A stretch of 64,000 bases of DNA from Ophelia neglecta (GCA_965285935.1 OZ260665.1:49786001-49850000), one strand, 5' to 3'; positions 2,825 through 50,784 are shown, counted from the first letter of the stretch. The notes: a model not told the origin generated them from the letters alone. Made by a program: numbers and translations.

Positions 2825-3055
2825 GTTATTGGTGGGCCTTTGATTTGTGTTATTGGTGGGCCTTTGATTTGTGTTATTGGTGGACAGTTGATTTGTGTTA
2901 TTGGTGGGCCTATGATTTGTGTTATTGGTGGGCCTTTGATTTGTGTTATTGGTGGGCCTATGATTTGTGTTATTGGTGGGCCTTTGATTTGCGTGATTGG
3001 TGGGCCTTTGATTTGTGTTATTGGTGGGCCTTTGATTTGCGTTATTGGTGGGCCT
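2825..3055. repeat. 24-bp minisatellite GTTATTGGTGGGCCTTTGATTTGT, about 9.6 copies
   Basis: Head-to-tail units starting at 2825, 2849, 2873 ... 3041 with few substitutions and no spacers. Confidence 0.97.
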
Positions 3056-14368: not shown

Positions 14369-14470
14369 ATGACGGAAACGATCTGGCTACAGCGTCCTAG
14401 CGGGGATGTGCCGTGGGGGTTTCGACTGACCGGCGGCAGGGACTACCAGCAGCCCCTAACAGTACAGCGG
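14369..14470 (+). CDS. Gene B (Zasp-like PDZ+ZM protein, no LIM) exon 1: PDZ N-half
   Basis: MTETIWLQRPSGDVPWGFRLTGGRDYQQPLTVQR, then CGG|gtaggc donor, phase 0. Confidence 0.95.
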
Positions 14471-21054: not shown

Positions 21055-21203
21055 GTAACGCCCGGAAGTGTAGCAGCCACAGGATTAACACAGGATGACG
21101 TCATACTGCGGATCGGAGACTCGGACACTAACGCGCTTACGTATGCACAAGCTATGGAAGTCATCAAAGAATACGGCAACACGCTACAGCTTTGCATATA
21201 CAA
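21055..21203 (+). CDS. Gene B exon 2: PDZ C-half (missed by the ORF track)
   Basis: tttacag|GTAACG ... AA|gtaagt; 149 nt, the same length and phase as gene A exon 2. VTPGSVAATGLTQDDVILRIGDSDTNALTYAQAMEVIKEYGNTLQLCIYK. Confidence 0.93.
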
Positions 21204-27737: not shown

Positions 27738-30099
27738 GCGGGGTGGCGGACAAGGGTCTCCGGCACAACAGGTAGCGGGGGCACGTCCCTCTAACCAAAC
27801 TTCTGGCACGCATGGTTTGTTCGAAAACATGTACAGAAGTTCGGAGGCCGTGTCACGCAGTTCGCCTGACCAGCAGCAGGGGATGTCCGCAGGCTCGGCT
27901 CACCCCCAATACCAGACCCAGCGATCAATTGACCCCTACAAGCCCAGTGCACCTAAGCCTTTTATGTCACAGTTCTCCCATGATGGTTACAATGTTAGTA
28001 ATGTTAACTCTTCTGATTCTCGGCCGATCAATACTCACTCCTACCTGGGATCTACCCCTGATTCTTCCTATCCCATCCACCCCCAATCTTCTCTCAACTC
28101 TTCGCAGTTCTCTCAGTCTCCTTACGGAAGCACAGTAGGCTACTCCGACGATTATAATGCACCCCAATGTGACATTCAGCCACCATCTTACAAAGATGTA
28201 AACTCAAATAGAGATGAGGTTGCTTACTCGGTAGGTGAAAGTAAGTCCAAAGAAATACCCGTACAGTATGATGGCTCTGGGTTTTATCAGCGCGCACAGC
28301 CTGCCCCATCTAGTACCATCTTACCCACAAATCAACCTCCTAGGGGAGCCATTGTTGACCAGCAGCAAATGTACGATAATAGCCAACTGAATGAGCAAGA
28401 TAATCACAGAATGGAACAAGAGTATGCAAAAGATCAAAATAACTATGAACAAGATCATGTCCGTGAACAGACAACAGAGGGTAATTATCGTATTTCTCAG
28501 CAAGGACAAGGTTACAGCCAGCAAAATATACCAAATCAACGGGAACCTGATCATTTTAGTGGATTGTATAATCAAGGAGGACAGCAAAGCTACAGACAAC
28601 CTGGGGACGGGTTAGCAACACAATACCAGAATATGCAGCCAGAGCAGAAAGAGGTCGAATATCATGCCTACAGGCAGCCCGAACAGGGCAGGCCTCAATA
28701 TCATGTTCGACAAGAACAGGATAACCCACAATATCGTGGCTACTTGCCACCGGAAGCATCGCAGCAATATCATGCTTCCCAGACCCCATTATCACATGGG
28801 TCAGATTCCGGTTACCCTTGTACCCCGTCAATGTCTTCATCAGTAAGCGAGCTATCTGATCACTCTTCTGGCCACTCCGAGAGCCGCCAAGGGCCACAGC
28901 AAGCCACAATTACTGGCAGCTACTCATTTGCTCCTACCGATGAAACAATTGAATTTCATCCTGTCATGGCACATCAACAGGCCAAAGAGCCTGACATGTT
29001 TCAGCCTGTTCCAATAGTTGGGAGCCCAGGTGGTCAGAGTCATCAAGCTAGTTATGGCCTGCAAAGGGGTATTCAAAACCGAGGTGACCCAATTCCCCAT
29101 ACCCAAAATAGTTACGAATCGGCCAATGAGTCTTCTCCTGTAGAAGTATATGGAACAGCTATATCTCACTCTCCAGTAGAACCAAGAACACCCGATGAGA
29201 CATTAGAACAGTTTGGGCCTCCAGTAAGCCATGAACCTTCAACTCCCAAGTCTAGTGAGTGTCCACTCCCTCCTCCTCCTCCTCAGCCATATCCAGTCGG
29301 TGAAAGTCAAGCTCAGCAAGAGGCATTTTCTGGTTTGCAAAGACAACAATCACTTCCCCTTCCGCCACAACCACCACCGCTACAAACTCAACAAAGTTAT
29401 CATGGGTATCACAACCAAGATTTTCCACCACCGCCAACACCTGATTCTCCCAGCGTTCCCTCGGCCCCGATGATGCGAGGTGCACCTCCACCGGCTCCAC
29501 CTCTGCCTGACTCCCAGCCCCCCGATTATTCTCCCAACTTAAGCTCGTCCTCTCTAAGCAGTCCCAACCCACCGTCCGCAGATACATGGGCTCCTCCAGC
29601 ACATCACCCCTTAGAACCAAGGAAACAAGAACTAACACTTAATTCGGCATCACCATATGTGCCCTATAGCCACCAACAGCCAGCAGTTCCCCATTCTGCC
29701 AATACACACCAGCCTGCCAGTGCCTATATGACTAACGTACATGATCCTACTTCAGGACAAGCTGCTGGTGTTCCCCCTAGTCCCGGACAAAGTTTTTCGC
29801 CAACTCTTCCCTGGATAAAGTCGGCTTCTACCCAGGACCCTAGTTTAGGCATCCCTGAAGTGTCCGCCCCTACTCTTTTGGAGGAGAATAGAGCAGACCC
29901 GGCCACTGCTGGGCCTTTTGATAAGGCTCCAGCGGATGACGCCCAAACTAAACACGGGCCTCCTCCATCGGCGCCACCCCCGCCGCCGCCGCCACCTCCC
30001 CCACCCCCTCCATTACCACCGAATATATTGTCTGCACCAACAAAATCGTGGAAAGACAAAAACAAACAAGCTGAAAGCCCCAGCTACGAGCCAGTCAAG
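27738..30099 (+). CDS. Gene B exon 3: giant 2362-nt Gln/Ser/Pro-rich low-complexity exon (possible short form 27738-27771)
   Basis: tcttcttgttttcag|G acceptor in phase 2, open through the 784-aa ORF to AAG|gtaatg (phase 0). An internal CAG|gtagcg at 27771 is in the same phase. Confidence 0.88.
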
Positions 30100-30193
30100 G
30101 TAATGATAATGCACGCCTTTCGGTATTGCAGGTCGATTACTTCTAGAATAGACACATTAGCTATATTGTAACAATTGTGTGCAACAGTTGAGC

Positions 30194-31898: not shown

Positions 31899-32126
31899 AC
31901 CGCCCAATGCGCATATGCCTCGGTACCAGGAAGCTTTGAACCTTCCTTCTTTTGATGACCGCCCAGTCCACAAACCAAAGGGTGCTACTCAGACGCCGGA
32001 GCAACCCCAAGATAATGCCTCGATGGTGTCCAATATGCAGTACAATACCCCCTTGAATATGTACTCAGAAGACGCTGTTGTTGAAGCATTTGAAGGACAG
32101 ACTGGGGCAAATGTCACTGGTGTCGG
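31899..32126 (+). CDS. Gene B exon 5: ZM (Zasp-like) motif
   Basis: ccttacag|A ... GG|gtaggt; contains VSNMQYNTPLNMYSEDAV, matching the QYNxPxxxYS ZM pattern. Confidence 0.92.
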
Positions 32127-33900: not shown

Positions 33901-34095
33901 AAAGTGCACCTAATCAACAACAACAGAAGTCCAGAAGAAGAAGACCACCGAACCAACCCCAGAACCCTAACTATTATTCAGATGATGCACAAGATTCAGA
34001 CGGTGGCATAGACAAACTTAGTTATGTTGGTGGCAACATCCCGTCCCGATCTTTCAAGTTACTGCAACACGGTCTGGGAGATGATCAACATAATG
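33901..34095 (+). CDS. Gene B exon 9: type-A repeat 3
   Basis: 195 nt, phase 1-1; LSYVGGNIPSRSFKLLQHGL. Confidence 0.92.
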
Positions 34096-34810
34096 GTTGG
34101 TATCCATAAAATTATAGTCATTTTACAGGTTGATTACTTTTGAAATAGAAGGTTAAGCTTGTTCTTTTAAAAATTAAGTAGTGGTATGCATTAATTTTGA
34201 GTGTCTTAACCCTATTAAATCATGTTATAAGTTTTGATATTTTGGAATTTTTGAAATAAACTTTATTGCTGCTAACATAGTAGATGAATGTCACCAAATT
34301 CCAATGTGATTAAGCGCACATTTAAATTTTACTAGTTACGCTCAGTTTATTTTCGTTGCCCTAACAGTTTCCCCAATATGTGTCTTGTATTTTTGCAATC
34401 CTCATTGTAACACAACAAAAGCAATGTTATCTCCGCACACTTCTGAACAACCTAACTTCAAAATCTGAAGCAACTTATGCATTTAAGTCACGATTTGTCA
34501 CAATATATGTTTTGTTCTGCATTGCTTTTGTTATGTTCTCATTGGCAAGTCATCTATCTTTTTTGTCAACCCTTGCTTTCATATCATGTCCAGTTCAAGG
34601 TTTTATGCTTTCAAAATTTGGTATATTACAAACAAGGCATGCATGTTGAAACATTTGCCTTTAAATATTGGGCAACGCGATATTTCATCTAAATAAATGT
34701 CCAAATTATTTCGAAATGAATTCTGCTGTAAAACCATAAAGCCTGTTGTTCGATAAGTCCCGATTGGCTGATTCCCCGATCTGAGTACGCCTATTCTTTT
34801 TCTCACACAG

Positions 34811-34929
34811 CACCCTCTCCTCCACCTAATGGGAACGCCCCCGGCCAAGGACGCACTGTAAAGGTCGTTCGTTTACGTGCCCAAAATCAACCGCAAGCGC
34901 CGGATGACGATGGCTGCACAGACTTCTAG
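34811..34929 (+). CDS. Gene B alternative last exon 10a (short isoform; missed by the ORF track)
   Basis: Strong acceptor ttctttttctcacacag|; APSPPPNGNAPGQGRTVKVVRLRAQNQPQAPDDDGCTDF*. AATAAA at 35521, 35802 and 35933. Confidence 0.88.
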
Positions 34930-35520
34930 TTTGCGCATTTCACGTGTTACGTCAGCCACCACGTGATCAGCGTTGAACCAATGAATAGTCCATTGTGTTT
35001 TCAGAAGCTCAGAAGCTTTTGTATACCTTTCTTTTGACGGAATAGCTTACTGGTTTCATGGTGCAAATTACAACATGATATGTGCAAAAGTCATGTCACA
35101 TATTCAATTTAAACAAGGATACATCCATAGTTTCTGTGCATGGCCCATATGGAGAATAGGATTATGTTTATAAATTGTGCCAAGCCATACGAAATGGACT
35201 AAAGAAAATGGATACCATCAAAGGGATTCTTTTCCTGCAGTATTCTTTGTAAAAATGATATAGCGTATGGATTGCCACATAACTGCATGACTATCTGTGA
35301 ATGATGTGCATTGTATGTGCTTGAGTGCTGTGAATTCTTATATGAGTCACCCTTGATGTCACTTCTCACTTGATGACGTTACTTTGGTATTTGACCTACT
35401 GAAATAGTTTATTCAATTTGATTGAGACAAGTTTCAATCACTTTGAATGAATGCCAATTTACCATAATTTATTGTACTGTTAAATATGCACCACTCTTTC
35501 TTCGAGTGGTTTTTTATCAA

Positions 35521-35938
35521 AATAAAACAAGAAACTTCCCATGAATTTAGGTGCGAAACTGCGTGGTCAATAGTTAATGACACAAATTATTTATTTGTTT
35601 TTTTTTCATATGAAAAAAAGTAGGCAAATTTTATAACCATATGAGTAACTTGTTAGATGTAGGATTGTTTGCTTGCCGACATCATTTGATGTCGTTTTAA
35701 CATTGTTGATGTATTATGGACAACTTTTACAATTTGAAATTTTCACTCCACTCTCTTCAATTGTACCTTCATAATCTGCTGTAAAATTGCCTTTATGCAA
35801 AAATAAACTTCAGTTTTGTTTTCAAGAAATCTGGTTTTTCGCATATTACCCAAATAGGCATCTGGTGGCTTTGAAGCAATTTATGTTATAGATTGTGTTT
35901 TACTTAAGTAATTTATGTTAACTTGAAATTACAATAAA
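35521..35938 (+). terminator. Candidate polyadenylation signals of the short isoform
   Basis: AATAAA at 35521-35526, 35802-35807 and 35933-35938, downstream of the 34929 stop; which one is used is unknown. Confidence 0.45.
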
Positions 35939-36696
35939 GAAAATACATTGGGTAGATTTAAGTTAGAATGTTTAGATTTGTGAAATAGACTTAAACATAA
36001 CGAAACGTACATTGACTGTACAAGTCACGACTTAACATGACATTATATGTAATATTATTTTAGGGGTAGGAAAATTGAATTATGAAAAGTATTTTAGGGG
36101 TAGGCAAATTGAAATATTAGAATTAGTTTTAATACCAAAGTAAAATGGCGGCTTAACGCTACGGACAAAGGACGACGCCCTTCCACCCCGCCAGATCACA
36201 TCTCCCTATGAACCTTTAAAATATATACAAGTTTTAACTGCATTCACAGTAAAGTCTTTGCAAAAAATAAATAAAAATTGTCACATTAGAGTAATTTTGT
36301 TTTGAATAAATGCTTTCTGAGTGTGAACACATAAAACCTCATAAAACAATAAGGACAATTTCGTGTAAGTTATATGGCTAGCATCAAATTACATGTCCCA
36401 AATCCATAACTATGCTCTCTTTGGACTGATATCACTGAGGAAACATCAATAGTTTTTCATTGTTCCCTAAAACAAATGACACTGTCCTTGTGCTACAAAA
36501 TAGGTCCCTCCCTTTAGAGAATGCATCACTGAAATGACCTGTTTCAAACAACGCGGCCAGCGTCACCATCTGAAAGGGTATTCGCATTGCAAAGTTAAAT
36601 AAGTGATACTATTTGAAGAGAACATAAAAACAACCAATCATTGCAGTAAAGTGAGAAGAACAGTATAGGTAAATATTTAGTCATTTTCTTATCCAG

Positions 36697-36843
36697 AAGC
36701 AAAGTTGGGTACTGGCGAGTACAGCGATGACGAAGACACTGGTTATCCCATGGACAAGATGTGCTATTTGGGTAAAGACGTTCCTTCTAAGGCCTTTCAA
36801 TTAATACAAGGGGTATATGCTCCAGACTCCTCGGATGCTAAAG
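36697..36843 (+). CDS. Gene B exon 10b: type-A repeat 4 (long isoform)
   Basis: 147 nt, phase 1-1; DKMCYLGKDVPSKAFQLIQGV. Confidence 0.88.
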
Positions 36844-36961
36844 GTAATTGTTCATACATCCTTCCACTTTTTAATAAAGTAATAATTCATAGCGCGTTAA
36901 TATCCATGTAGTATGCAAATATACAAACTGGTTGCCACTACATCCGCTGGGTTGTTTCTAG

Positions 36962-37117
36962 TTGTGGCCAGCGAGAGAAGACTTCGTCGTCGACGTCAGA
37001 AGTCACATGATGCCGAAAAAGATGAGGATGATGAGACTAGCGCCTTCGACGAGCAGGCATATCTGTCTGGCCAAGTGCCTATTGTCAGTGGGGAGGCCAA
37101 ACCAAGACCTCTAAGAG
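36962..37117 (+). CDS. Gene B exon 11: type-B repeat
   Basis: 156 nt, phase 1-1; FDEQAYLSGQVPIVSG; G|gtaaga donor. Confidence 0.87.
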
Positions 37118-38503
37118 GTAAGAGAGCATGCCTCCTGTTGTAAATAGCATCTTCAGAATGGATACGTTAATTAAATACAACTCTACACATCTGCCTACGA
37201 AAAAGTGGCAGCGGATTCGCATAAGACAAAGAGAAATCACCAATCAAGTAAAAACCGTTGAATAGGCAGATGCAGGAGGCGTCAGACGCGAGGTACCAAT
37301 TCCTTATTTCAAAATTGTAAATATGTATGTTAAGAAACATTTGGAGGAACTTGCATATTTTGCATCGTATTATTGTCCATCCCTATATACGGCTCGCATG
37401 ACACCTAAAAGACATTTTGCATACGGGCTGTGTGAAAACAACGGGAATTGGTACCCGCGAGACAAAACAAAAAGATTAACCATGAAACGTCCATTAAATT
37501 GGTCGAAATTCACTAGGAACAACCGGCCACAGCCACAGAAAACTTGACCCCACTTTCTGGAGAGCACATAATACAATGAAACACTCGGGTTTTTTTAAAG
37601 TCATATACAAACAACCAATTGCTATCATAATTATAAGCGGTGTTTTAATTTATGCATTCTGTCGATAAAAAAAGGTCCTTACATTATATGTTTTGTATTC
37701 AAACATTATTTATTTTTTCTTTGATGATCACATAGTGTCATTATACATTGCCGCAATGTGCAACAGTTTTTCATGCGGTGATCACATAAAAACGGGTCAG
37801 TGGCTAAGGCAGAACAATTATGAAATATTCCATAAGAGGGAGTATATTACGGATTTAGCTCATTCACAAATTTGAGACTTAGGATGGATGAGTCTAAGAA
37901 ACACAACACAACAGATTGATGTATATAGACATCGCATCCTCAAGAGAATATACAAATCCTCAATTATGTAAAAAAAAAAGTGATGTAATAACTGATAAAT
38001 CAACAAAGTCAACCTATCACAACTGCATCTGAAACATATGATGCTGCTTCAGTATGAATGCATATTGGCTTTAGCCCTAGGACGAGCGGAATATATTTTA
38101 CTTAAAGGCATTGCAGTCTTTTACTGCGAATGTTTTAAAACAAGGGCAACTAGAAACCATACAAGTGCAACCTATAACAGTGACCTTGAATATTTACTGA
38201 CTCTCTTACGTCTGATAAAATCATTTATAGTATAACATATGCATGGATATAGTACTATATGCATCGTGAGGATGGATTTAAGACTAGCATAAAAACAGCA
38301 CCCCACCAGCCACATCCTTTAAAAAGATTAATTTTTAACACAAATCTGCGCAAGTTCTCATGTAACATATAATTAGCTTTAAGTGGAACATGTTCAAGAC
38401 TGCAGTGAGTGCCTTGTAGTAGATAACAAGCTTCATTAGTTATTATTGCGTCTTTGTTTTACAGCAGGCTAATAAGACATAATTAGTTGTTATCTTTTGA
38501 CAG

Positions 38504-38650
38504 AGGCGCTTATCGATGAACAAGAACACCAGGATGAGGAGGAGGGGGAGGCGGACAAATACAAACAACCTTTCGACGAAAACGAGTATTTGTCTGGGAA
38601 GGTCAGTTTCCTAGGTAATGAACCAAAAGGATTTGACAGAGCAAAAAGTG
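38504..38650 (+). CDS. Gene B exon 12: type-B repeat
   Basis: 147 nt, phase 1-1; KQPFDENEYLSGKVSFLG. Confidence 0.87.
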
Positions 38651-38754
38651 GTACGTTTAGTTTACTCCTCGCAATTTGAACTATCCTAAATCGTTTAATT
38701 GATTTATTAAACTCGTAATCTGACACTAGCTTATCATTCACTGATACTTCACAG

Positions 38755-38841
38755 AACCAGATGAAAAGCCCGAGTGGGTAAACAAATCTTCCAAGATGAA
38801 GAACATCGATGAAAACACTTTTCCCAGAAGCAATAGGGAAG
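38755..38841 (+). CDS. Gene B exon 13: short type-B variant (missed by the ORF track)
   Basis: 87 nt, phase 1-1; EPDEKPEWVNKSSKMKNIDENTFPRSNRE. Confidence 0.82.
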
Positions 38842-39017
38842 GTATAGACTCACTTGTTTCACAGGAAATGTTGACTAGTTAAATGCCCCATTTGAGTTTT
38901 GTGTCGGTACATGATCACTTAGTAGAAACTTAGTTTTCCTCGTTAATAGCCTAAGCATCAAACAAAACCTGCACATAAATATGTCTGCATCAAGCTGTCT
39001 TTGACAATTTATAACAG

Positions 39018-39110
39018 AGCACGATGAGCAACCCGATTGGGTCAAGAAAACAACGCAAATGAAATCACAACAATTTGATGAAAGCACATTTGTGAAAACG
39101 GCCCATGAAA
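39018..39110 (+). CDS. Gene B exon 14: short type-B variant (missed by the ORF track)
   Basis: 93 nt, phase 1-1; EHDEQPDWVKKTTQMKSQQFDESTFVKTAHE. Confidence 0.85.
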
Positions 39111-39295
39111 GTATGTTAAAATTAAAAAGGTGTGATTAGATTAGCTGCACTGTTTTAATTCATTCGAGCTGTTTGGAGTGTGAGTATACGTACTGTGTGT
39201 GGATAGCTTGTTTGTCGGACACGTTTGTTTTGTTTTCTACCTTCTTAAAGATATAATACGAATTTCACAAGGGTTCTTATTGAAATCCATAACAG

Positions 39296-39388
39296 AAGCA
39301 GGGGACCAGCCGGACTGGATTAAGAAAACGGAGCTAATAAAGTCTAAACCCTTTGACGAAAGTGCCTTTGTTAGAAGTGACACTGAAC
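39296..39388 (+). CDS. Gene B exon 15: short type-B variant
   Basis: 93 nt, phase 1-1; AGDQPDWIKKTELIKSKPFDESAFVRSDTE. Confidence 0.85.
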
Positions 39389-39724
39389 GTATGTACATTT
39401 ATTATTACTTAGAATTTATCAAGAAAGATAATTATGCAAAGTACTTTTATAAGTGCAAGAGGAAAGGTCCAGAAGGCATTATAGTGGTGAAGTGGATAAG
39501 ACTGAAGACAACTGGTGAAGAACAAACAAGTTTGCAAGCATGATGACGACTTTATTGAAATTAAACTCAAGAATGAAAACGTGCATAGCACACGCTCTCG
39601 GAGCCGCGCAAAATTAGTGAAACAGGAACATAATGAAAATAGATGGTTTATTTTAAACCATCTATTTTCAACAGTGTTGACCAATTAGTATAACAAACTT
39701 TATTTTGCTGTTTTCCACATTTAG

Positions 39725-39844
39725 CGGAGAGGGAGGAAAGTCCTGGTCCTCGCATGAAGGAGGAGGAATACGACGAGAACGCCTACCTGTCAGGACAGAT
39801 AGGGGTTGTCAGCGGAGTACCTCCTAAACCAATGCCAGTTCATA
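39725..39844 (+). CDS. Gene B exon 16: type-B repeat (missed by the ORF track)
   Basis: 120 nt, phase 1-1; EEEYDENAYLSGQIGVVSGVPPKP. Confidence 0.86.
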
Positions 39845-40198
39845 GTAGGTTCCGTTTAGAAGAGCAAATACGTTAATATTGTATTCATTTGAACGCCATA
39901 CCAATTGTCACAGTATAAGAGAGTATATTGTGTGCGGGCAATAACGAAAATAACTGGTTACCACTTGAAACAATTACCCGTACTGGTAATCTTCAGTCAT
40001 TTGACTGGGTTATTATCGTGTGATTGCTCAACATGTATTTTGACTTTCGTAATTGGTTCGTAATTGCACTGTACGCCACTGAACACCCGCTTCCATATTG
40101 TGATCGTTTCACAGATAAAGGAGCAGACTCTATGATATAAGGCAAAAGTGCGATAAAGCTGCTTTAAAAATTATTTCAGTTCGTTAATATTATTTCAG

Positions 40199-40498
40199 TA
40201 CGGTCGACTGTTAAACCCCCCGGTAAAAACTTAGAGACTGAACTGCCAGACTGGGCCAAAAAAAGGCGCCAACAAAAGAGACGCCGGCGCGAGCAGCAAC
40301 CGGAAGCTATCGTGCAGAACGGGACTGCAGGACCCGAACAAAAAGCAGAGGATGATGCTAGCTTGAAACTTCGCCAGCAACAGGAACAAGAGGAGGAGGA
40401 ACGACATAAACAGCCATTCAACGAGGACGCTTTTCTGGCCGGGAAAATCAATATTCTCCGAGGATCTGTTGATAGGGAACAAGTTCCCAGAGCAGTTG
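40199..40498 (+). CDS. Gene B exon 17: type-B repeat with basic and acidic insert
   Basis: 300 nt, phase 1-1; LPDWAKKRRQQKRRR...KQPFNEDAFLAGKINILRGSVDRE. Confidence 0.87.
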
Positions 40499-43400
40499 GT
40501 AAGACTTTATACTTGCATTGCCCTACTGAAGCGACAAAAAGTATCTTTGTTGCCCTCAAGGATATATGTATATGTTTATATGTGTATAATTATAGTATAC
40601 ATATACATAAAATTATTTGCATGTTACAAGGTGATTTAATATCTAGATGACATTTGAAGTACTTTAATAAGTTGCCTTATTCATAATTAATTCATACTCT
40701 TAATTAATTCCTAGCTCTGGCCACACATTCGATATTTTAGGAGTTACTAGAGCCTTCGTTATGAAAAACAAAATTTCCTTTACTAAGTTTATTTAGATTC
40801 AACTTCTACCCAAACGTCGAAATATTTGTCTTTTTCGGAACAGATCATATGCCATTCTTTTGGTTCAAACGGAAGATGTTTGACCATTTTATTGGCTATC
40901 CGTGTTAGGTAAACATTTCGTTTAGAATGTGCCTTCATGGCAATCCGTATTTGCCACTATCTTTTCAGCTCAGCTATTAATTTATATGTGTTCCGTAGGA
41001 AACCCGTCCGTTTGAATAAGAAAAACAGAGACTTTCAGTTTTAGAAGTGGGAAAAATACAAAATAGCATAATTCATTTAAGTAGTACGCCTATCTGGCAC
41101 ATTGGCATGCAAGTCCTAACACAGTTAAGCGTGTAGTGCAGAGCTACAATTGCCTGTTCTATTCACTCGGTTAACCAATTGAGTGTTTTCAAAAAGTGGT
41201 TAGCTGAATGTTATATTGTGACAAAACGATCGCTTTAGCCCTTCTTTATAATTATTAAAGATAACACCTCAATCTGATGAAATGTTTGATTTTCGTATTA
41301 TTATTCCAACAGTGTGTAAATGCTTATGCGAAATGACAGTGGCAGAGACTTGGAACATAGATGTATTGCGGTTCCACGAATTAAAATTAAAACCTCCCAT
41401 ATAAAATACGCCTATAATTGATGTCCTGTATCAAATACATGTACATGTATAGCAGATAAATACTTTATAAATACATAGCCTGTGGAATAAATTATTAATG
41501 TAACTCGCTGAAAACAATGCTCGTCACCCTCGCCTCTCCTGTCCCCCTCGTCATGCCCATGGCCACCCTCTTCAGGCCGTTCATGAGAATCTTTGATGTG
41601 AGCACCATAACACTTTTGTTGTCAAAAGCGACCAATTTGGTGATGCATCACCATTGAAATAATAGTTATTTGTAATAGCCCTTAGACGCAAAACTACTAC
41701 TTTTTCCTCTACAAGCCCACACGAATACTAGTAATAAACGTCACATATTCCCTTTGGCAAAGGCCCCGCAGCCACTAATGAAAATAAAAACATCATTGGT
41801 AAGACTAACAAAATATCAATAGAATATACAATATGTATATAGCTAACCCATATTATCATGTCTTCCTGTCTACCGAGATTATTCGAGATATGAGTAATCT
41901 TTGCCAGTTTTATATTTGGTTCTTACGTTTCAAAGTCTCGGAACTTTTATTTCGCTCGGAGTCGTTTTCCAAAGACAATTAACCGCGGTGCAAGAAATTA
42001 GACCTTAAAGAGCCATGTAGAATATATTACCGAACATAACAAATAATTAAATCGCTGCATCCACGCACAATTCAGTGGCTTGGAATCTTTGGTTCAATGG
42101 CATTGTGTTTGACTGCCCTCGCGTTCTTGTGTAGTCGGCCGAATGACATGTCACGTCAACATTATTCATTAAATGACGATAACCTGGAGATGCGATTTCA
42201 CAGTCCATGTAAGCGAGGCTCGCACGAGATAGTAACTGTTGTGAGAATCAGATTGTCGTCTGTTGTATGTACACCTGTTTAGGCAATTGGCTGGCAGCCA
42301 TCCTCCACCCCGAGGCACCTTCGGCCTCATTCTACATGCATGAGGCGAACTAAACCACCTCCGAGGCACAGATATTTCAGTTTCACATCGTCAAGTCAAA
42401 GGACATCATCGACTGTGTTTGGTGAAGAGCACCATGTAAATTTTCTATAAAAAAAACTCATGTGAGAAAGTGCGGATATTAATCGTTGCATTAGAAGGGG
42501 TTTAAGGATTACATATTACTCCAAAGTATAGGTTTGCTTTAAAATAAGGACAAACCTTCTAGCAGAGGGCATGGCACTAGTAAGGGACCTTAATCACAAT
42601 ACTATGAAGATACAGACAGCCATTGGACTGAGGAAATACCGCAACACTAGATCACTGAGTGCCGAGTTTGCCGACTTTTATAAACAGTGTACGGCCAGAC
42701 ATGCGCGCACCTCCCTGGCCGACTTGATTATCTCCAACTCAGGTATGGACCTCCCAGTGACGTAGTCAGTCTCCCTAAAACACCTTGTGTGGGATCGTCG
42801 GGAGGTTTTTTTTAAATTGAAACTGGTACATATTCAATTCCCTCATATCATTGGAGTTATAAATACACAATTTGTTCATAGCAGAAATGTGGTATAAAAA
42901 GTGTTTTCAGTCTAAATTGCTAGGGGCATTGGACAGCTTTCGCCGAAAGCGACCACTAATACAGGATGTCCTAATATATTTTTGACTGAAATTACCTCAA
43001 CAGCAATCGGTAGTCCTTTTAATTAATACATCGTAAAGGCAGACTAATGATGACATAACGATTAAGGGCATTATAAGTTAATAGATGTTTTATTAGTCAA
43101 TCGGTGAATTTGCACTATGGTTCACTTATGAGGATCCTTGACTTTTTTCGTTTGTTCTCAACCTTTTTGTAAATAGAAATAGCAATAACTAGAAATGGAG
43201 ATACATTTAGCCCAACTTGGAGGAATGTATCGAACACACAATTATATTGAACAGATCGTTCTCCTTGGCCTAAGACCAACAATAAGAAAAAGTCACTGCC
43301 TGTAGACAAAAGAGTTAACTGTGCAAATAATAAATCATTATTATAAAAGTTTCGGTATCGCACGGTATATATTAGGAATGGCTCCCATGACCAAGGTTTG

Positions 43401-43954
43401 TTGTCAAGGTTTGTGAACATTCTCATACTTAAAAATATTCCATTTAATTGTAATTCAAAGTTCTTGCAGTGTTATAGGAAGTTGTCAGTATTCATTCTTT
43501 CAAATGTATGTTAAAACTCTTGCGTGGAAAGTCAATAACATATTCCAATTCACTAAGAAGAATATATTAAATTTAGGCTACGTTTTACTTCAATTAATAT
43601 CTCAAATTCGCCATTTGAGACTAAAACAAATTGATTTGTCAATAGGAAGTCGCTGATCAATTACAGGTGATATTTGATGTTCATTCAATGTGCCTGGGTT
43701 ATTTTTTTCCATGGTTTGACACTTTTTAATGACTATGTAACTATAAGACGATACTTTGTAACACTCAACGCCATACTGTTAGTATAATTGACCAGATACG
43801 GCCATTAGGGTAGGAGAAGGACAAGTCCATTGGGACATCAGGAGGAATCTCGGTATGTTGAAACTCTCACCTCGACCTAACTCAGACGTGATGGGTCAGC
43901 TACTGTAATCATACTCTAGCACCTCTTTTTAAAAAAAGCTCATTAATAACTTTA

Positions 43955-44156
43955 ATGGCGGATGTAGGGTATTTCAAAGAGGTTGCGCTATCAGTGTCTA
44001 TGATTGCCTCCGTCCTGAGGGGTAGTTGACTTCAGCCCCCCACCCCCCTCCCCGCCCACTTCCATCCCCACCCCAAACCCCTCTAGAGGCTTCCTAGAAT
44101 AACTTGTGCAGGGGAGGGGTCCTAATATTCCCGTGCTGCCCCTCTAGAACAGCCAT
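43955..44156. mobile_element. Degenerate GC-rich MITE-like relic
   Basis: Imperfect terminal inverted repeats ATGGCGGATGTAG / CTAGAACAGCCAT around C-rich and G-rich internal tracts. Confidence 0.35.
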
Positions 44157-45673
44157 GGCTAATTACCTTTGTAGGTACATGTAACGAAGTCACTGGAAAT
44201 GTGCCAAACACACCCTAATGCCAGTATAATATATCCTTTGATCTACGAAACTAGAACGAAAACTGCCAATTATTTCTCAATATATACAAACCAAACCAGA
44301 TGGTGATCGACAAGGTCCGTCACCATACTAGTCAGCCTACTTGTGCATAACATAGGGGCCTGTATATACCGGCTTATTGGGCCCGCATTAAAGATAATTT
44401 AATTAAATACTTTTCAATGAAACCATAAATGCTAATACGTTATAGAAATTATGATATTTGCAATTAAAACAAATTCGAGATACATTAACTTCTATGTGGA
44501 ATTCAAACGCAATCCATTGTGTTTTGTCTTTTGGTCAAATAAATGTGGTGAATGAGATGGAATTGTCCCAACAACTGTAAATCGACATTATTTCTCATGC
44601 ATTGATACAAAATGCATGTATAAGGTCTATATATATACCAATGTGACAGTAATAAATGTCGACGCTAGTGAAATAAGTTCCCACGCTTCATCAAACAAAA
44701 TTTCAAAGCAATAAAATATCCACAACTAGATTTCATGACATTTCAGCTGCGATCCTTATAGGTGTAATCTGCCATCGAAGTAATAACAACTTCTGCAATA
44801 ACAGGCTTCGTGTATAACAAAATTATGCCTAAATAACAAAGCATTATAATCAGGCCCGGGGGCAAATAACATTCGCGGAAGGGACTGTAAAACAACCGAC
44901 TCGGTGTAATACTAACTTTGTCAGCTAAATAATTGTTGTTTTATTGCACTATAATTGAGGCGTTTTGTTTTGTGTGCTAGTGACAATTGAATAACAGACC
45001 ATGATACACATGTACATGTCATGTTCTGTCAGTAGCGATGTGCATACTAATTATTCAATCAAGAAGAATTTATGCAGGAATAAGCCGTTATGCTGTTGTG
45101 GTATGTTAACATCATGTTTTCCTACCAAAGCGCACTTTTCTAGCCTGACTATGCATAGACATGCACGATATTTTATTTCCACATGCACAGCAAATTGAGA
45201 TGAAGCATTATAACTTCAAATCAACCATCATTGGCTACCGGTAGGCTACCGGACAAATGTCCAGAACGAAAGAATCAAATGAATTTTCACTCCCCGGGGA
45301 TGATCTAGAACCGACCTGGGCCATGACGTTCACAAAATATCCTTCCTGCATTGTCTTCTTCGCACAAGTATTCAATTAAAAGTGGGTCGAAATCGGTACA
45401 AAACAATGAATTGCATCATATTTTATAGAGTGTTGGGTATTTCTGCCGTTTAATGTGTCGTGGTTTTTATTAAATTAATATAAACATGTAAGGCATATTT
45501 TACATTCATAATGTTACAGATTAAAGGCAAATTGTCAAAGCCAAACTTGTAAAATCAATCATGTGAAGATGGCAATGCACAAGTTGGAGGTTGAAACCAG
45601 CATGTTTCAGTGACACGGATGTCATCCTAGAGAGACCAGTTAGCTATCACTCAGTTTAATGTCATGTTTTCAG

Positions 45674-45823
45674 AAACCACCACTGACGACAACCTTGCCC
45701 CATGGCAGAAAGAAGAACCAGAAGAGAAAAAGGAAGAGGTTTTTGATGAGGACGCCTATCTCAGGGGCAACATACCCCTTTTGCGCCAATCTGTGGAACG
45801 AGACAGTAGCCTTCCACCAAGAG
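45674..45823 (+). CDS. Gene B exon 18: type-B repeat
   Basis: 150 nt, phase 1-1; APWQKEE...FDEDAYLRGNIPLLRQSVERD. Confidence 0.88.
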
Positions 45824-45947
45824 GTACTTTGAATAGGCTCTGTTATTGGCAGACAAGGGCGTAAATAGAAAAATAGTAACAGATTAAAGCTAAAAGCAAC
45901 TGAGCAAGATGTTTTGATAACATTTCCCTTTGCTATCTATCTGTCAG

Positions 45948-46115
45948 AGCCTCGACGACAGCAAAAGCGCCAGCGGGCGCCTTGGGAACGTGATGACCCG
46001 GATAGGGAGGAAGGCGCATGCTCAGACGCCGAATTTGATGAGAATGCCTTTCTTGCCGGGAGGATTCCTGTTGTCAGAAATAGTGTAGAAAGAGAGACCC
46101 CTCCTGCAACAAACG
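45948..46115 (+). CDS. Gene B exon 19: type-B repeat
   Basis: 168 nt, phase 1-1; APWERDD...FDENAFLAGRIPVVRNSVERE. Confidence 0.88.
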
Positions 46116-46373
46116 GTTAGCAATAACTTTAAAGGTTTCCAATTACACGACTTGCCTGGTTTTAAATTATTAAAAGACCGTTTACTGTGAGCTGTATGAA
46201 CACATGCTTATGTAAATAATGCAACGAAGCTGTTAAATAATCTTTATCAGTCCTATAAATTAATTAGTTAAAAGTTGGGTTATAATACAATGTTCCATTT
46301 CTCTATCCAAACTCAATGAGACTAGCCGTTCTCGATAACGATCTGATAAGTATATGCTACAACATTTTTGCAG

Positions 46374-46451
46374 GTGCAACCCAATTTGCTGTTATACCAT
46401 CGAGGAAGTTCAACATTTTGCGCCGTTCAGTGAGCCGCGATAGATCAATGG
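46374..46451 (+). CDS. Gene B exon 20: A/B hybrid repeat
   Basis: 78 nt, phase 1-1; ATQFAVIPSRKFNILRRSVSRDRSM; tttttgcag| acceptor and |gtaaga donor. Confidence 0.84.
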
Positions 46452-47986
46452 GTAAGAAATTCAATGGCATGCTTTTTGCCATGGTGGTTTTGGTCACGAA
46501 ACACGTGTTTCGAAAATCCCCTTCGTAATCTTGTTAATATGGTGGTTGCCTAGAAAAGGTACTTACTTTTTCTGTTATTAGCCCACGAGATTCCCATGCA
46601 CTATCAGTTATGAAGATACAATTATAATTTTGCTTCGTAACGGTACCCAAACTGTTGAATTTTATAACTAGACATTTTAACATGTCTCGTTTTGGGCCGT
46701 GTTAAACATGTTTTTAATTCAAGTGGATCGGGCATATTTAGTACACGTTCAGTGTGGCCTTCAGAAAATGGCTACGAAAAACTTCAAATTGAAAATATCA
46801 ATATATTTAAAATATTTTATTTCAGAATTATTATAATGTAAATGAAAAAAAGGGCAAATCTGATTGTTTGCACACATCTCCTTTACCAGATTAAAAGCAT
46901 GTGAATACCACCCAATTTTAACATTTGAAGCATACAAATATAACGTAAAATAAAACATATCTCCTTGGTATGTGAAATACGCCCACTCTATGCGTTGACG
47001 ATATTTCCATATTATGTATGTTTAAGTTTATGCCATGTTTGGTGAAAGCCCAACGTGATCTAGGGTTATATAAGAAATGTAGTACGATACGAAGATCATT
47101 TGGAATGAAAACTTCGTTTAAAACTCGCCATAAAAACATGGCCCAAGCACGAATTAAGCAGCATACATGAATGCTGCTTAATTTGTGGCAAGTTCACCCT
47201 TGACCTGGAGGTCCTTTGCCCGAAACCTCGACCTTTGGTTTCATTGAAATTCAGGATATGCCACTCTTGAGGAGCCACTCTTGAGGAGGAACCACTCGTA
47301 AGGCGCGACGGTAAACAATGCGGATTAACCAACTTGGTTTATTTGCGGAACCATTATATGGGCAGGCCTACAGCCATGATTCTGTAACTAGCCGTCATAA
47401 GAATCAGTAACACTTACGGCTAGTACTGCTCCCAATAAACCAAAAAAAAGCCCATTGGAGTAAGACAAAGGCTGGTGGGAAAGTAACTACGTGTATTGCA
47501 TATAACATACCATTCACAATGGTTGGAATCAATAACGCTCTAACTCACGTTCAGCCATTTTGCAGGAGGAGGAAAGCAAACTAAAAGATAAAGTTCTAAC
47601 TCAATCCCAATGACATATTTTTACGTGCAACAAAGGTCTTAATAAAGCCATTTAACTGATAAATGAAATGAATAAAATTTAGTCAGTTGGCTTCAGTCAA
47701 ATAAGTATTCAGTGTGTTACAATAATAGAATATTGCATTAGTACCAACCTAAGCGATAAAGAATATTTGGATAATGAAAGTTTCAACTTCAATTAAATTG
47801 GCAGCATTAGGAACGGGCCATTTGTGTAATTTCTTGATCGGTGTTTTGGCTGTGATTGGTACCATTTGGCGAAATCTGAGCATTGGACAACAATAACCAC
47901 GTCATAGAAAAGCAGAGAAAAGAAAGTTATATACCGGAAGCTATGGTCGTTAAAAGTCCATGGTGGAACCACTAGCCTAGTATATA

Positions 47987-48148
47987 CAGTGAAACCTGTC
48001 TAATCAGGTCAGTCAAAGGACTGGAAAAACCTAACCACATCATGTAGGTGACCTTAACACAGGCATTATAGAGATTGGGCTGTTTTTAAGTGAACATAGT
48101 GGGCAGGTGACCTTATTACAAAGGTGACCACAAACACATGTTTCACTG
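47987..48148. mobile_element. Tc1/mariner-pogo-type MITE, copy 1 (162 bp)
   Basis: TA|CAGTGAAAC ... GTTTCACTG terminal inverted repeats, internal AGGTGACC repeats, and homology to the copy at 50785. Confidence 0.8.
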
Positions 48149-48209
48149 TGGTGTATCCGCCGTACTATATCGCCTTGTACAGTGTTCTACGAATAGCATG
48201 TAAAGAAAG

Positions 48210-48233
48210 ATATATATATATATATATATATAT
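48210..48233. repeat. (AT)n microsatellite
   Basis: About 12 AT units. Confidence 0.9.
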
Positions 48234-48608
48234 GAACAATTTACAAATTCCGACTAATCAGCAAACATATTATTCAGACCACATAAAATAAGAGTATTGC
48301 CCAGTAGTCTACGACAAAATCACATATCTTTAATCTGGTATAGCCTGCTTTCGTGTGGAAGGATGTTATGATATCAGAAATCGTTCGTAGTTACAGATTG
48401 CCAGATGCAATTGATAAACCTTTGTAAATTCCTTGGTTTTGACCCGTATCTTACATGTCATTGTTGATTGTGTTTGGTTTAATTAATGCCCTGTTGACTT
48501 TCAATACATTTAAACACTTGCGTTTATTGCACATCGTCCCAATCTGCATGCCATTTCCCACCTTTTTGCATGGCATATTGGTCTATATATTCAACCCTTG
48601 GCATGCAG

Positions 48609-48767
48609 ACTCAGACGCTTGTGAGGAGGAGAAGAAAGAAAACGAATCTGACAAAGTCATCGATCACATGGCTTATTCTGGATCGAAAATACCATCAAAG
48701 ACGTTCCTCAAACTAAAGAAAAATGTTACCAGACAAACTAGTCTAGAACGGAGTCAGGTTCCTCAAG
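48609..48767 (+). CDS. Gene B exon 21: type-A repeat
   Basis: 159 nt, phase 1-1; IDHMAYSGSKIPSKTFLKLKKNV. Confidence 0.86.
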
Positions 48768-49464
48768 GTATCCATACGGAGCTATATAGACGTGGTGTGC
48801 AAATATATATAACGCGTATTGACCACTGTCCAGTCTAGAGTATAACATGTATTTTCATGCTCTACATTTTCAAAACAAACCATTTGTTTAAACCAATTGA
48901 AAAATATATTCTAAATATATTTTTTGCGAAGATAATCTCAAGAAAGTTGGTCTGTTTGGATTTTATTATCCTCTATGATGAAGCCCAAAACGAACATCTT
49001 CAGCCAATATACAGTGTCAGGGTCACGACACAAACAACACTTGATAACTCAGACATGAAAAATTCGGTTTCCAACTCCCCTAACAACTCTGAACTCAAAT
49101 ATTAATTGGAAAAATGATGTTTAAAACTTAGGCTATTTGCATCCGGTCAATTTGTATAGAACAAGATACATACGGTTAAAACAATGGTTTGCTATGAAAA
49201 AAGGGTAAAGTTGAAAAACAAAACAATAAGACAGGACTTCGTTTGCTGTTTTATGTTACTGACACGCATAAGACAAACAGCTGGGTCGGATTAGAATACA
49301 ATGAGGTAAATATTCGGGTTTGGCAGTGTACGTGGTGTAAGTCTAATTATATTACTGATAACGGTAGCAAGACAAAAAATAAAATGTTAGTTCACACTAT
49401 TTGAAAAATGTTTGCAGAAGCTTTAGCACCATTATAATATTAACGATAATTAATTTAAACACAG

Positions 49465-49622
49465 ATCCTATGGCGCGCATACGTCAAAAGGCTGTGCCGG
49501 AAGCTGGAAACATACCCCCCGTGGATAGCGCCATTGACAAGATGACCATTGACAAGCATGACCCGGAAAAATACATGGAATTTCTCAAACAAACTGTTGG
49601 GGAATCGAATGGACCAGTCAAA
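49465..49622 (+). CDS. Gene B exon 22 (penultimate exon, long isoform)
   Basis: acacag|AT ... GTC AAA|gtaatg (phase 1 to 0); DPMARIRQKAVPEAGNIPPVDSAIDKMTIDKHDPEKYMEFLKQTVGESNGPVK. Confidence 0.8.
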
Positions 49623-49744
49623 GTAATGTATCAAAACTGAGAGCACAGTTATTCAATTATATATCTTAATGGTCCTCTTTTGCCCCCGATTTCACCTCAT
49701 AATATTGCACATAATGTTTACAAAAATGGTTGACATTTTTATAG

Positions 49745-49777
49745 GTGGAAGCAGAAGAAGAAGTGACAGATTTTTAG
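49745..49777 (+). CDS. Gene B last exon 23 (long isoform): VEAEEEVTDF* (missed by the ORF track)
   Basis: tgacatttttatag|GTG in phase 0; ends with the same TDF* as exon 10a. AATAAA candidates at 51582 and 52398. Confidence 0.83.
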   Translation: MEAEEEVTDF

Positions 49778-50784
49778 ACAATGTCACCACACAAATCCTT
49801 GATTTGAAGCCGTGGATTTTACACCCTTTCATTTCAACAGTAATACATATACCTGAACATAAAAACTAGACTGGCAGAAAACAACAAACAACGCACTTCC
49901 ATTTTTATTCTACTACTTCGTAATAGTGGATCTAGTTTTTGGGTGTGCGGATGTGAGTCATTACTCAATGCAAGCATTTGTTTGTCATATTTTATTACGA
50001 GATTATAAGTGAATGGATGACAGGTATCAGTGGTTGTGTCCTAGATTCATGACTACATGATTATATATATTATGTCGATATTTGCTATATTTTAGATTAT
50101 TCTATAGACTCAGACACAGACTATTTTATTCATATTCAAAAGCAAATTCGGTTTATATATTGCAATAATATATAGTCCAGGCGATTCCCGCTGAGTTCTA
50201 TAAAAAGGCGCTCTCACGGGAGCTACCGTTTTATAATACTAGTTTTAAAAAACAAATCGTACGTTTAAAAAAAAAATGATTTGTTGTCTGTATGTTGTAA
50301 ATGGACAAATATAAAGAATTATAGGTGACATTTATTGTTAATACCGAATAATTTTTTTTTAATTCCGATTTAGGATTGGTGGCATATGAAAGAAAACCAT
50401 TTGGTAAGCAGTAATAGTATATTACATAGGGCATTTCCCAGCCACACCATCATTCTAAAGATGACTTGCAGTTAGGCATAAAGAAAAAGAAAGGGAAAAA
50501 TATATTGATAGGTTGTACGTCTATTAATGGTCATTGTATTATTTGGTGGTCCTATAGTGAGCTTCACCTAGTGTGCGATTGAGGTTAGAGTTAATACAGA
50601 AGACAGAAAATTAAATACGTAAAATAAAAATCTACAACTTAGAGTCGACCCTGATAAGAAATAATACAGGCCTACCAAACAGTACCATTTCAATAGAAGT
50701 CTCATAATATGAAACAATGGACAATCTATACCTAGAAATACCTTGGCTCCGTTAATGGTGTTCAAAAACACCGGGATTATAGTA

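What the first reader, a model, noticed from the sequence alone, without database searches (positions are those of the whole stretch)
34811..49777. Two alternative last exons 15 kb apart end in the same acidic-TDF* tail
Seen: exon 10a ends DDDGCTDF* and exon 23 ends AEEEVTDF*; both were missed by the ORF track and each has downstream AATAAA. Choosing the distal end adds about 590 aa of repeats (1358 vs 1948 aa with all exons) while keeping the terminal motif. Known: vertebrate myotilin and FATZ bind Enigma-family PDZs through acidic C-terminal motifs. Inference: the tail is an obligatory binding signal and isoform choice changes the spacer length and valency, like a molecular ruler.
Basis: partly seen in the sequence, partly recalled or inferred. 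Interest (0 to 1): 0.78.

Follow-up and report, generated by a model that had tools for sequence, protein, structure and literature searches.

The report
Two gene ends, same TDF tail
A muscle-scaffold-type gene (PDZ domain plus Zasp motif, no LIM domains) in what is probably an annelid genome can end at either of two last exons 15 kb apart. Both end in the same conserved Thr-Asp-Phe tail, which looks like a docking signal for PDZ domains and turns out to be shared by this protein family across protostome animals.

Summary
Exon 10a (34811-34929, ...DDDGCTDF*) and exon 23 (49745-49777, VEAEEEVTDF*) are in the sequence and fit the reading phase of their upstream donors (34095 and 49622).

- **Conservation.** Both exons are kept, in the same order and position, in an unnamed relative (35% identity in the big exon) and in Capitella teleta. 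For exon 10a, dN is 0.16 against dS 0.85.
- **Transcripts.** Spliced cDNA contigs from relatives show both forms. One joins the exon-10-type motif to a 10a-type tail. Two run from type A motifs, and in one case from the PDZ domain, through the B repeats to ...EVTDF*. No RNA run exists for this genome, so its own junctions stay untested.
- **Family.** Mollusc orthologues end with the 10a-type segment, so the proximal end looks like the ancestral one and the distal repeat module looks added in the lineage that includes Capitella. A [ST]-[DE]-[F/Y/L/M] end is a family signature: 37 of 78 long proteins that carry the type A motif have it, including the neighbouring paralogue (...GTSDF*).
- **Likely role.** The tail's register matches alpha-actinin's ...GESDL* in this genome (class I PDZ ligand), not the myotilin/FATZ motif. 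PDZ binding and the "ruler" idea are plausible but untested, and one AlphaFold2 run did not dock the tail in cis.

The parts
14369..14470 (+). First coding exon: start codon and the first half of the PDZ domain, with the PWGFRL motif
   Evidence: Translation. It is 73% identical to the orthologous contig and 87.5% identical to Lineus P0092.
21055..21203 (+). PDZ exon 2, with Tyr at the first position of helix alpha-B (LTYAQAMEVIK)
   Evidence: Pfam PF00595, E 6.6e-07. PDB hits include DLG, ALP and ZASP PDZ domains. Sequence.
27738..30099 (+). Large Pro/Gln-rich exon; the boundaries are approximate
   Evidence: ORF 27817-30171. It is 35% identical to P0001 from the orthologous contig. Splice candidates.
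32026..32109 (+). Zasp-like motif (ZM), QYNTPLNMYS...
   Evidence: Pfam DUF4749 at 27.6 bits, against a cut-off of 28.7, covering profile positions 2-29.
33901..34095 (+). Exon 10, the last exon shared by both forms. It carries a type A motif (YVGGNIPSRSFKLLQ), and its donor at 34095|GT leaves one base.
   Evidence: It is 67% identical to L001 16770-16940.
34736..34810 (+). Conserved stretch of intron just upstream of the 10a acceptor. It contains GATTGGCTGAT and an identical 19-base pyrimidine tract plus AG.
   Evidence: Alignment A1. Identity is 78% here against about 60% further out. It is not conserved in Capitella.
34811..34929 (+). Exon 10a, coding part with its stop: the proximal alternative last exon, ending DDDGCTDF*
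   Evidence: dN 0.16, dS 0.85. Counterparts are the Capitella ORF at L014 8278-8517, cDNA contig L012 and the mollusc C-termini.
34930..35527 (+). Putative 3' untranslated region of the short form, up to the first AATAAA at 35521. It includes a conserved CACCACGTGAT just after the stop.
36697..36843 (+). Exon 11, the first exon of the distal part. It has a phase 1 acceptor and a type A motif (YLGKDVPSKAFQLIQ).
36962..46451 (+). Run of short phase-1 exons, most of them carrying the type B motif (FDExAYLxG...)
   Evidence: Collinear conserved blocks and splice phases. The same repeats occur in cDNAs L013, P0216 and P0217 and in Capitella P0215.
48609..48767 (+). Exon 21, the last type A motif (YSGSKIPSKTFLKLK)
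49465..49622 (+). Exon 22, with the conserved segment AIDKMTIDKHDPEKYMEFLKQTV; donor at 49622|GT in phase 0
   Evidence: It is 67% identical to the orthologous contig.
49745..49777 (+). Exon 23, coding part with its stop: the distal last exon, VEAEEEVTDF*
   Evidence: L002 18805-18837, VEVEDEVTDF*; Capitella VEAESEITDF*; cDNA ends.
50623..50628 (+). First AATAAA downstream of the distal stop (an ATTAAA lies 13 bases before it, at 50610)

Best explanation
One gene on the + strand encodes a Zasp-type scaffold protein: an N-terminal PDZ domain with PWGFRL, a ZM motif, repeated short linear motifs and no LIM domain. It has two alternative last exons.

- **Short form.** The donor of exon 10 splices to exon 10a and the transcript is cut and polyadenylated soon after.
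- **Long form.** The same donor skips 10a and splices to exon 11. That adds a dozen phase-1 repeat exons, about 600 aa, before the protein ends in exons 22-23.
- **Shared tail.** Both forms end in x-Thr-Asp-Phe-COOH. I read this as a class I PDZ-binding motif in the same register as alpha-actinin's ESDL. Its likely receptor is a Zasp/ALP-Enigma-type PDZ domain with His at helix alpha-B position 1, as in the neighbouring paralogue and in most orthologues.
- **Consequence.** If so, the choice of end changes the number of internal motifs and the distance between the PDZ head and the tail, but never removes the tail.

Shown: the two ends, their conservation, their coding constraint, both transcript forms in relatives, and the family-wide tail. 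Inferred: use of both ends in this species, PDZ binding, and any effect on Z-disc assembly.
For: - **Reading and phase** of both ends.
- **Chance:** TDF* expected 0.35 times per strand, seen twice, both at conserved sites.
- **Orthologous contig L001/L002:** it keeps 10a between the exon 10 and exon 11 counterparts, and keeps an 11-codon exon 23.
- **Coding constraint:** 10a has 14.5 synonymous against 12.5 non-synonymous differences (dS 0.85, dN 0.16). The blocks GQGRTVKVVRLRAQ and DDDGCTDF have none of the non-synonymous ones.
- **Read-through:** reading past the exon 22 donor gives unrelated ends in the two species, whereas the spliced end is conserved.
- **Capitella teleta:** the locus has the same order (PDZ, ZM, type A...GGVTDF*, type A, B repeats, type A...SEITDF*) and the same DSPc neighbour on the opposite strand.
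- **cDNA contigs:** L012 joins an exon-10-type motif to ...GRRVKVTRLRSQ...GATEF*. L013 joins a type A exon to the B repeats and ends ...EDEVTDF*. P0216 carries PDZ exon 2, with the same Tyr, together with the distal end ...NEVTDF* in a single ORF.
- **Mollusc orthologues** end in the 10a-type segment.
- **Family tails:** 37 of 78 profile hits of 250 aa or more, and 11 of 16 hits that start with the PDZ, end [ST][DE][FLYMIV]. Rough amino-acid frequencies (my estimate, not a tool result) would give about 0.5%.
- **Context in this genome:** the paralogue ends ...GEGTSDF* and alpha-actinin ends YGESDL*.
- **Literature:** Zasp-type PDZ domains bind alpha-actinin through PWGFRL (PMC5081203). PDLIM PDZ domains accept type I and type III C-terminal motifs (PMC10754285).
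Against: - No RNA run holds this stretch, so neither junction is seen in this species and the ratio of the two forms is unknown.
- This gene's own PDZ has Tyr, not His, at the position that normally reads Ser/Thr at -2. Self-binding in this lineage is therefore doubtful.
- AlphaFold2 on a natural orthologue with both PDZ and tail (Tubulanus P0154, 15-sequence alignment) left the tail disordered (pLDDT about 39) and undocked.
- Capitella's public annotation splits the locus into two gene models.
- I found no paper that reports binding of such a tail.
Confidence: 0.6

Rival explanations
1. There are two transcription units. The PDZ gene always ends at 10a, and exons 11-23 form a separate downstream gene with its own promoter that happens to carry the same family tail.
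For: - Capitella's annotation has two models, of 708 and 777 aa.
- CCAAT-like and CACGTG elements sit around 10a and are conserved in the closest relative.
- No RNA data exist for this species.
Against: - Exon 11 starts in phase 1, exactly matching the exon 10 donor, and has no conserved start codon.
- cDNA P0216 contains PDZ exon 2 and the distal tail in one ORF. cDNA L013 runs from a proximal type A exon into the B repeats with the ORF open from the contig start.
- The Capitella distal model begins with what looks like translated intron.
- The noncoding elements are not conserved in Capitella.
Confidence: 0.12
2. The tail is conserved for a reason other than PDZ binding. It could be a phospho-dependent C-terminal 14-3-3 (mode III) site, a C-terminal degron, or a contact for another Z-disc partner.
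For: - No binding data exist.
- AlphaFold2 did not dock the tail on the PDZ in cis.
- The gene's own PDZ lacks the His that reads Thr at -2.
- The residues before the tail (Gly/Pro/acidic) are also conserved, so recognition may extend beyond a four-residue PDZ motif.
Against: - Ser/Thr at -2, acid at -1 and an aromatic or Leu at 0 with a free carboxylate is the textbook class I form, and it matches alpha-actinin's ESDL in the same genome.
- The tail co-occurs with Zasp-type PDZ domains in the same proteins and in the neighbouring paralogue.
- The residues upstream are acidic, not the basic context usual for 14-3-3 sites (my knowledge).
Confidence: 0.2
3. Only one of the two ends is used to any real extent in this species, and the other is a relic.
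For: No expression data exist for this genome.
Against: Both ends are under purifying selection between two species whose introns are unalignable. Both are kept in Capitella, and both occur in cDNAs of relatives.
Confidence: 0.08

Closest known systems
Drosophila Zasp66 / Zasp67 (LIM-less members of the Zasp PDZ family, the 'blocking isoforms')
   Same: An N-terminal Zasp-type PDZ, a ZM motif, no LIM domains and many splice forms. Isoform choice changes valency in Z-disc growth (PMC9751615, PMC5081203).
   Different: No C-terminal PDZ-ligand tail is mentioned in the papers I could read. This gene is much longer, with a large Pro/Gln exon and arrays of type A and type B motifs. Orthology to Zasp66/67 was not tested.
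Alpha-actinin C-terminus (ESDL) binding to ZASP/ALP-Enigma PDZ domains
   Same: The same register: Ser/Thr at -2, Asp at -1, hydrophobic residue at 0. This genome's alpha-actinin ends YGESDL*.
   Different: Phe instead of Leu at 0 and Thr instead of Ser at -2. The carrier is itself a PDZ protein, and binding is untested.
Myotilin / FATZ / palladin motif E-[ST]-[DE]-[DE]-L that binds Enigma-family PDZ domains (von Nandelstadh 2009, seen only as a reference in PMC9751615)
   Same: An acidic C-terminal tail on a Z-disc protein, aimed at the same PDZ family.
   Different: The register differs: that motif has Ser/Thr at -3 and acids at -2 and -1, with Leu at 0. The tail here does not fit it.
Vertebrate ZASP/Cypher (LDB3) and myopodin/SYNPO2 isoforms made by alternative 3' exons
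   Same: A PDZ head that is kept while alternative 3' exons change the C-terminal part. Some myopodin and CHAP isoforms have only the PDZ domain (PMC5081203). The rest is from my own knowledge.
   Different: There the alternative ends differ in content (LIM domains present or absent). Here both ends restore the same terminal motif.

Membership tests
Zasp PDZ domain family (ALP/Enigma, myopodin, CHAP, Zasp66/67) | N-terminal PDZ domain with the PWGFRL motif | tested here: met
   MTETIWLQRPSGDVPWGFRLTGG.... PF00595 on exon 2. The motif is as defined in PMC5081203.
Zasp PDZ domain family (ALP/Enigma, myopodin, CHAP, Zasp66/67) | Zasp-like (ZM) motif, Pfam DUF4749 | tested here: inconclusive
   27.6 bits against a curated cut-off of 28.7, E 5.4e-06, on the exon alone. 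Orthologous cDNA L012 carries an unmarked precomputed PF15936 hit, E-value at most 1e-5.
ALP/Enigma (PDZ-LIM) proper | [quoted passage not shown] | tested here: not met
   No full LIM zinc-finger pattern in any frame of the window, and none in the 150 family proteins. Both ends stop without one.
Class I PDZ-binding motif | Free C-terminus with Ser/Thr at -2 and a hydrophobic residue at 0 | tested here: met
   T-D-F followed by a stop at both ends. The family logo gives T49/S32 at -2, D71/E10 at -1, and F43/Y22/L12/M4 at 0.
Class I PDZ-binding motif | Binds a PDZ domain | not testable with these tools
   The only proxy was a single-chain AlphaFold2 run on P0154, which left the tail undocked at low confidence.
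Myotilin/FATZ-type motif E-[ST]-[DE]-[DE]-L | Ser/Thr at -3, acidic residues at -2 and -1, Leu at 0 | tested here: not met
   The tails are G-C-T-D-F and E-V-T-D-F.
Alternative last exons (splicing-coupled alternative polyadenylation) | One upstream donor and two phase-compatible acceptors, each followed by its own stop and poly(A) signal | tested here: met
Alternative last exons (splicing-coupled alternative polyadenylation) | Both transcript forms observed | tested here: inconclusive
   Both are seen in cDNA contigs of relatives. They are not testable in this species, because no RNA run holds the stretch.

The most novel reading that the evidence does not exclude
The [ST]-D-[F/Y/L] tail is a built-in ligand for Zasp-type PDZ domains. 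LIM-less Zasp-like scaffolds would then link head to tail, or compete with alpha-actinin's ESDL for those PDZ domains. This would be a second oligomerisation mode at the Z-disc beside the known LIM-ZM one. The annelid gene would keep this tail on both alternative ends so that only the spacing and the number of internal motifs change between isoforms.
Probability: 0.3. Interest if true: 0.75.

Novelty: new variant of a known kind. Interest (0 to 1): 0.55.

Why it matters
Zasp/ALP-Enigma proteins set Z-disc size by oligomerising, and mutations in them cause myopathies. A conserved PDZ-ligand-like tail on the LIM-less members, kept even when the gene switches to a different last exon, points to an interaction that the papers I could read do not mention.

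It can be tested directly in model animals. Drosophila species have a family member ending ...GPGQSDL. A published cloning primer implies that CG1674 ends ...YSDF.

It also shows that public annotation splits this locus (Capitella) or misnames it ("titin-like", "YLP motif-containing") in many invertebrates.

Tried and rejected
1. **RNA evidence.** The one run search found only three runs of unstated kind that hold 93-97% of the words, introns included, so they are almost certainly DNA. I therefore did not spend read laying, which could not have shown splicing.
2. **A longer 10a.** The 21 codons upstream of the acceptor are open and partly conserved. However, the only shared upstream AG is out of frame in the relative because of a 7-base indel, and Capitella does not keep the stretch. 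I treat it as conserved intron.
3. **The distal tail as a duplicate of the proximal one.** After the type A motif and before the last four residues, proximal and distal linkers are no more alike than shuffled sequences. This idea is unsupported.
4. **Intramolecular PDZ-tail docking by AlphaFold2.** Not predicted, but the test is weak: 15 sequences and a 460-residue disordered linker.
5. **Pfam on 10a, exon 22 and the repeat exons.** Nothing found.
6. **Another copy of 10a in this genome.** None.
7. **Literature.** Papers on Zasp66/67, the ALP/Enigma review, and a synaptopodin plus PDLIM search. None of the papers I read mentions such a tail. von Nandelstadh 2009 and the CG1674 paper are not held.
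8. **The joined spliced protein.** All searches were run exon by exon or with natural cDNA or protein records.
Full report
**What is in the window**

The window has no N. Its + strand carries a long, many-exon gene.
- The gene starts at 14369 with a PDZ domain split over two exons (14369-14470 and 21055-21203). The domain contains the PWGFRL motif and matches Pfam PDZ.
- A Pro/Gln-rich exon of about 2.4 kb follows (ORF 27817-30171).
- Next is a Zasp-like motif at about 32026-32109 (DUF4749, 27.6 bits against a cut-off of 28.7).
- Then come short exons that each carry one linear motif. Type A is YxGxxIPS[KR]xFxxLQ. Type B is FDExAYLxG.
- No LIM zinc-finger pattern exists in any frame.

By PDZ type and ZM motif this is a LIM-less member of the "Zasp PDZ domain" group as defined in PMC5081203.

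**The observation**

- Exon 10 ends at 34095 and leaves one base.
- Exon 10a begins at 34811 after a strong pyrimidine tract and AG. Read in that phase, it gives 39 residues ending DDDGCTDF and a stop at 34927-34929.
- Exon 11 begins at 36697 in the same phase.
- Exon 22 ends at 49622 in phase 0. Exon 23 (49745-49777) reads VEAEEEVTDF and a stop.
- AATAAA follows at 35521 and 50623.
- TDF-stop is expected 0.35 times per strand in shuffled sequence. It occurs twice on this strand, at these two places only.

**Are the two ends real? Genomic comparison**

The big exon found one relative, P0001, at 35% identity on a 44.5 kb contig of an ENA assembly. I walked along that contig as L001 and L002.
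- A translated comparison shows about two dozen collinear conserved blocks, which are the exons, with unalignable introns between them.
- Exon 10a is the best conserved block at 78%. It lies between the counterparts of exons 10 and 11 and ends QSQDDDGCTDF-stop.
- An 11-codon open frame, VEVEDEVTDF-stop, lies after the exon 22 counterpart.
- In 10a the differences are 14.5 synonymous and 12.5 non-synonymous (dS 0.85, dN 0.16). None of the non-synonymous changes falls in GQGRTVKVVRLRAQ or DDDGCTDF.
- Reading through the exon 22 donor gives unrelated short ends in the two species, whereas the spliced end is conserved.

Capitella teleta provides a third genome (L014).
- Its order is PDZ exon, ZM, type A exons and a 10a-type frame ending ...NVKVIKLRSS...SGGVTDF-stop. 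Then come an exon-11-type motif, B repeats, a last type A motif and VEAESEITDF-stop.
- A dual-specificity phosphatase gene lies on the opposite strand just beyond. The window has the same neighbour at 55872-56441.
- The acceptor of 10a is at the same codon position in all three genomes.
- Capitella's public annotation cuts the locus into two models, of 708 and 777 aa.

**Transcripts**

No RNA run holds this stretch. The three holders carry intron words too, so they are almost certainly DNA. The junctions therefore cannot be checked in this animal, and I did not use read laying.

The protein searches did return short JGI contigs with long uninterrupted frames. These frames cover what is split into many exons in three genomes, so I infer that they are spliced cDNAs of relatives.
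- **L012:** it runs from the ZM motif through type A repeats. An exon-10-type motif is joined directly to ...GRRVKVTRLRSQTSTEDTGATEF-stop. This is the short form.
- **L013:** its frame is open from the contig start. It runs from an exon-9-type motif into the B repeats, the last type A motif and the exon-22-type segment, and ends YEDEVTDF-stop.
- **P0216:** it begins inside PDZ exon 2, with the same unusual Tyr as here, and ends ...EPDNEVTDF-stop.

PDZ head and distal tail therefore sit on one transcript in a relative. That argues against a separate distal gene.

**Which end is older**

A profile of ten type A exons was searched against 1.84 billion proteins and gave 266 hits.
- The named hits are uncharacterised or misnamed proteins of molluscs, nemerteans, a rotifer, a horseshoe crab, crustaceans and insects.
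- Mollusc orthologues of about 900-1,060 aa start with the same PDZ. They end, shortly after the last type A motif, in a segment like 10a. Mytilus has ...GGGRTLKIITRS...EDAPSTDF and Octopus has ...EDSGCTDF.
- The proximal end therefore looks like the ancestral C-terminus.
- The B-repeat module with its own tail was found only in Capitella and in unnamed relatives.
- The linkers of the two terminal modules are not detectably similar. I cannot say that the distal tail arose by duplication.

**The tail as a family signature**

- Of the 78 profile hits of 250 aa or more, 37 end [ST][DE][FLYMIV]. Of the 16 that start with the PDZ, 11 do. Rough amino-acid frequencies (my estimate, not a tool result) would give about 0.5%.
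- The logo from 81 distinct tails is T/S at -2, D (rarely E) at -1, and F, Y, L or M at 0. Gly, Pro and acidic residues come before.
- A second search, seeded with a wasp family member, again gave mostly TDY, SDL and TDF ends. These include Drosophila proteins ending ...SRSFKILQAMTTPENAGPGQSDL.
- The head-to-head paralogue to the left of the window ends ...QSRSMQALEAHMQAEGEGTSDF-stop.
- This genome's alpha-actinin ends YGESDL-stop.
- The 10a peptide has no second copy in the genome.

**How it probably works**

The tail has the class I register and the acidic -1 residue of alpha-actinin's ESDL. Alpha-actinin is the classical partner of ZASP-type PDZ domains. PMC5081203 shows the dependence on PWGFRL, and PMC10754285 states that PDLIM PDZ domains take type I and type III motifs.

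Most orthologues combine a His-type PDZ with the tail in one protein. Head-to-tail contacts, or competition with alpha-actinin, are therefore attractive ideas. In this lineage the gene's own PDZ has Tyr instead of that His, while the paralogue keeps His. The paralogue is thus the more likely receptor here.

All of this is inference. AlphaFold2 on a natural nemertean orthologue folded the PDZ well but left the tail disordered and undocked. That is a weak negative.

The "ruler" idea rests only on the fact that the long form adds about 600 residues of repeats between head and tail.

**Novelty**

Alternative last exons, PDZ ligands and Zasp isoform switching are all known. The new points are these:
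- a conserved PDZ-ligand-like tail on LIM-less Zasp-type proteins across protostomes, which the papers I read do not mention;
- the restoration of that tail on both alternative ends.

My tests agree with it.

**Limits**

- The 190 N in L014 were left as they are.

Noticed in passing
window 34736-34810 and 34962-34972: About 75 bases of intron before the 10a acceptor (GATTGGCTGAT, a UG-rich stretch and an identical 19-base pyrimidine tract) and a CACCACGTGAT just after the stop are conserved with the closest relative, but not with Capitella. They could be elements that regulate the choice of end, or promoter-like CCAAT and E-box sites.
   Followed up: partly
G000:C8:49772569-49772910 (window coordinates -13431 to -13090), minus strand: The head-to-head paralogue has a terminal open frame ending ...QSRSMQALEAHMQAEGEGTSDF-stop, just downstream on its own strand of its ZM exon (window coordinates -12852 to -12097).
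   Followed up: partly
L003 (G000:C1:136034497-136037643), minus strand: The last exon of this genome's alpha-actinin ends ...STALYGESDL-stop, the canonical ligand of ZASP-type PDZ domains.
   Followed up: yes
window 55872-56441, minus strand: A single-exon dual-specificity phosphatase gene (Pfam DSPc, E 1e-32). The same neighbour, in the same orientation, follows the orthologous locus in Capitella (L014 17597-18025). This conserved synteny suggests that the genome is an annelid's.
   Followed up: partly
L014 2859-16556 (Capitella teleta KB309929.1): Public annotation splits what looks like one locus into two gene models, of 708 aa ending GGVTDF and 777 aa ending SEITDF. The second model starts with what looks like translated intron.
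   Followed up: partly
window 21142-21144; L001 about 4940; P0216 residue 30: Tyr replaces the usual His at the first position of PDZ helix alpha-B in this gene, in the closest relative and in cDNA P0216. Capitella, molluscs and nemerteans keep His.
   Followed up: partly
window 49510-49600 (exon 22): The segment D-x-A-I/M-E/D-K-L/M-x-I-x-x-H-x-P-D/E-x-Y-L/M-E-x-L-K is the best conserved part of the distal module in all relatives. It has no Pfam match, so it may be a binding helix of its own.
   Followed up: no
PMC11753949, primer table: The reverse cloning primer for Drosophila CG1674 (a synaptopodin-2-like Z-disc protein) implies a C-terminus ...NLPYSDF-stop, the same kind of tail. This is my reading of the primer and was not checked against the protein record.
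   Followed up: no
window 2818-3055 and 24161-24946: Two tandem arrays: a 24-base unit in 9.9 copies at 92% identity, and a 59-61-base unit in about 10-12 copies within the long intron between PDZ exon 2 and the big exon.
   Followed up: no
model m9d612480cea7, residues 468-477 of P0154: AlphaFold2 gives the type A motif a short helix with raised confidence (pLDDT 60-68) in an otherwise disordered chain.
   Followed up: no
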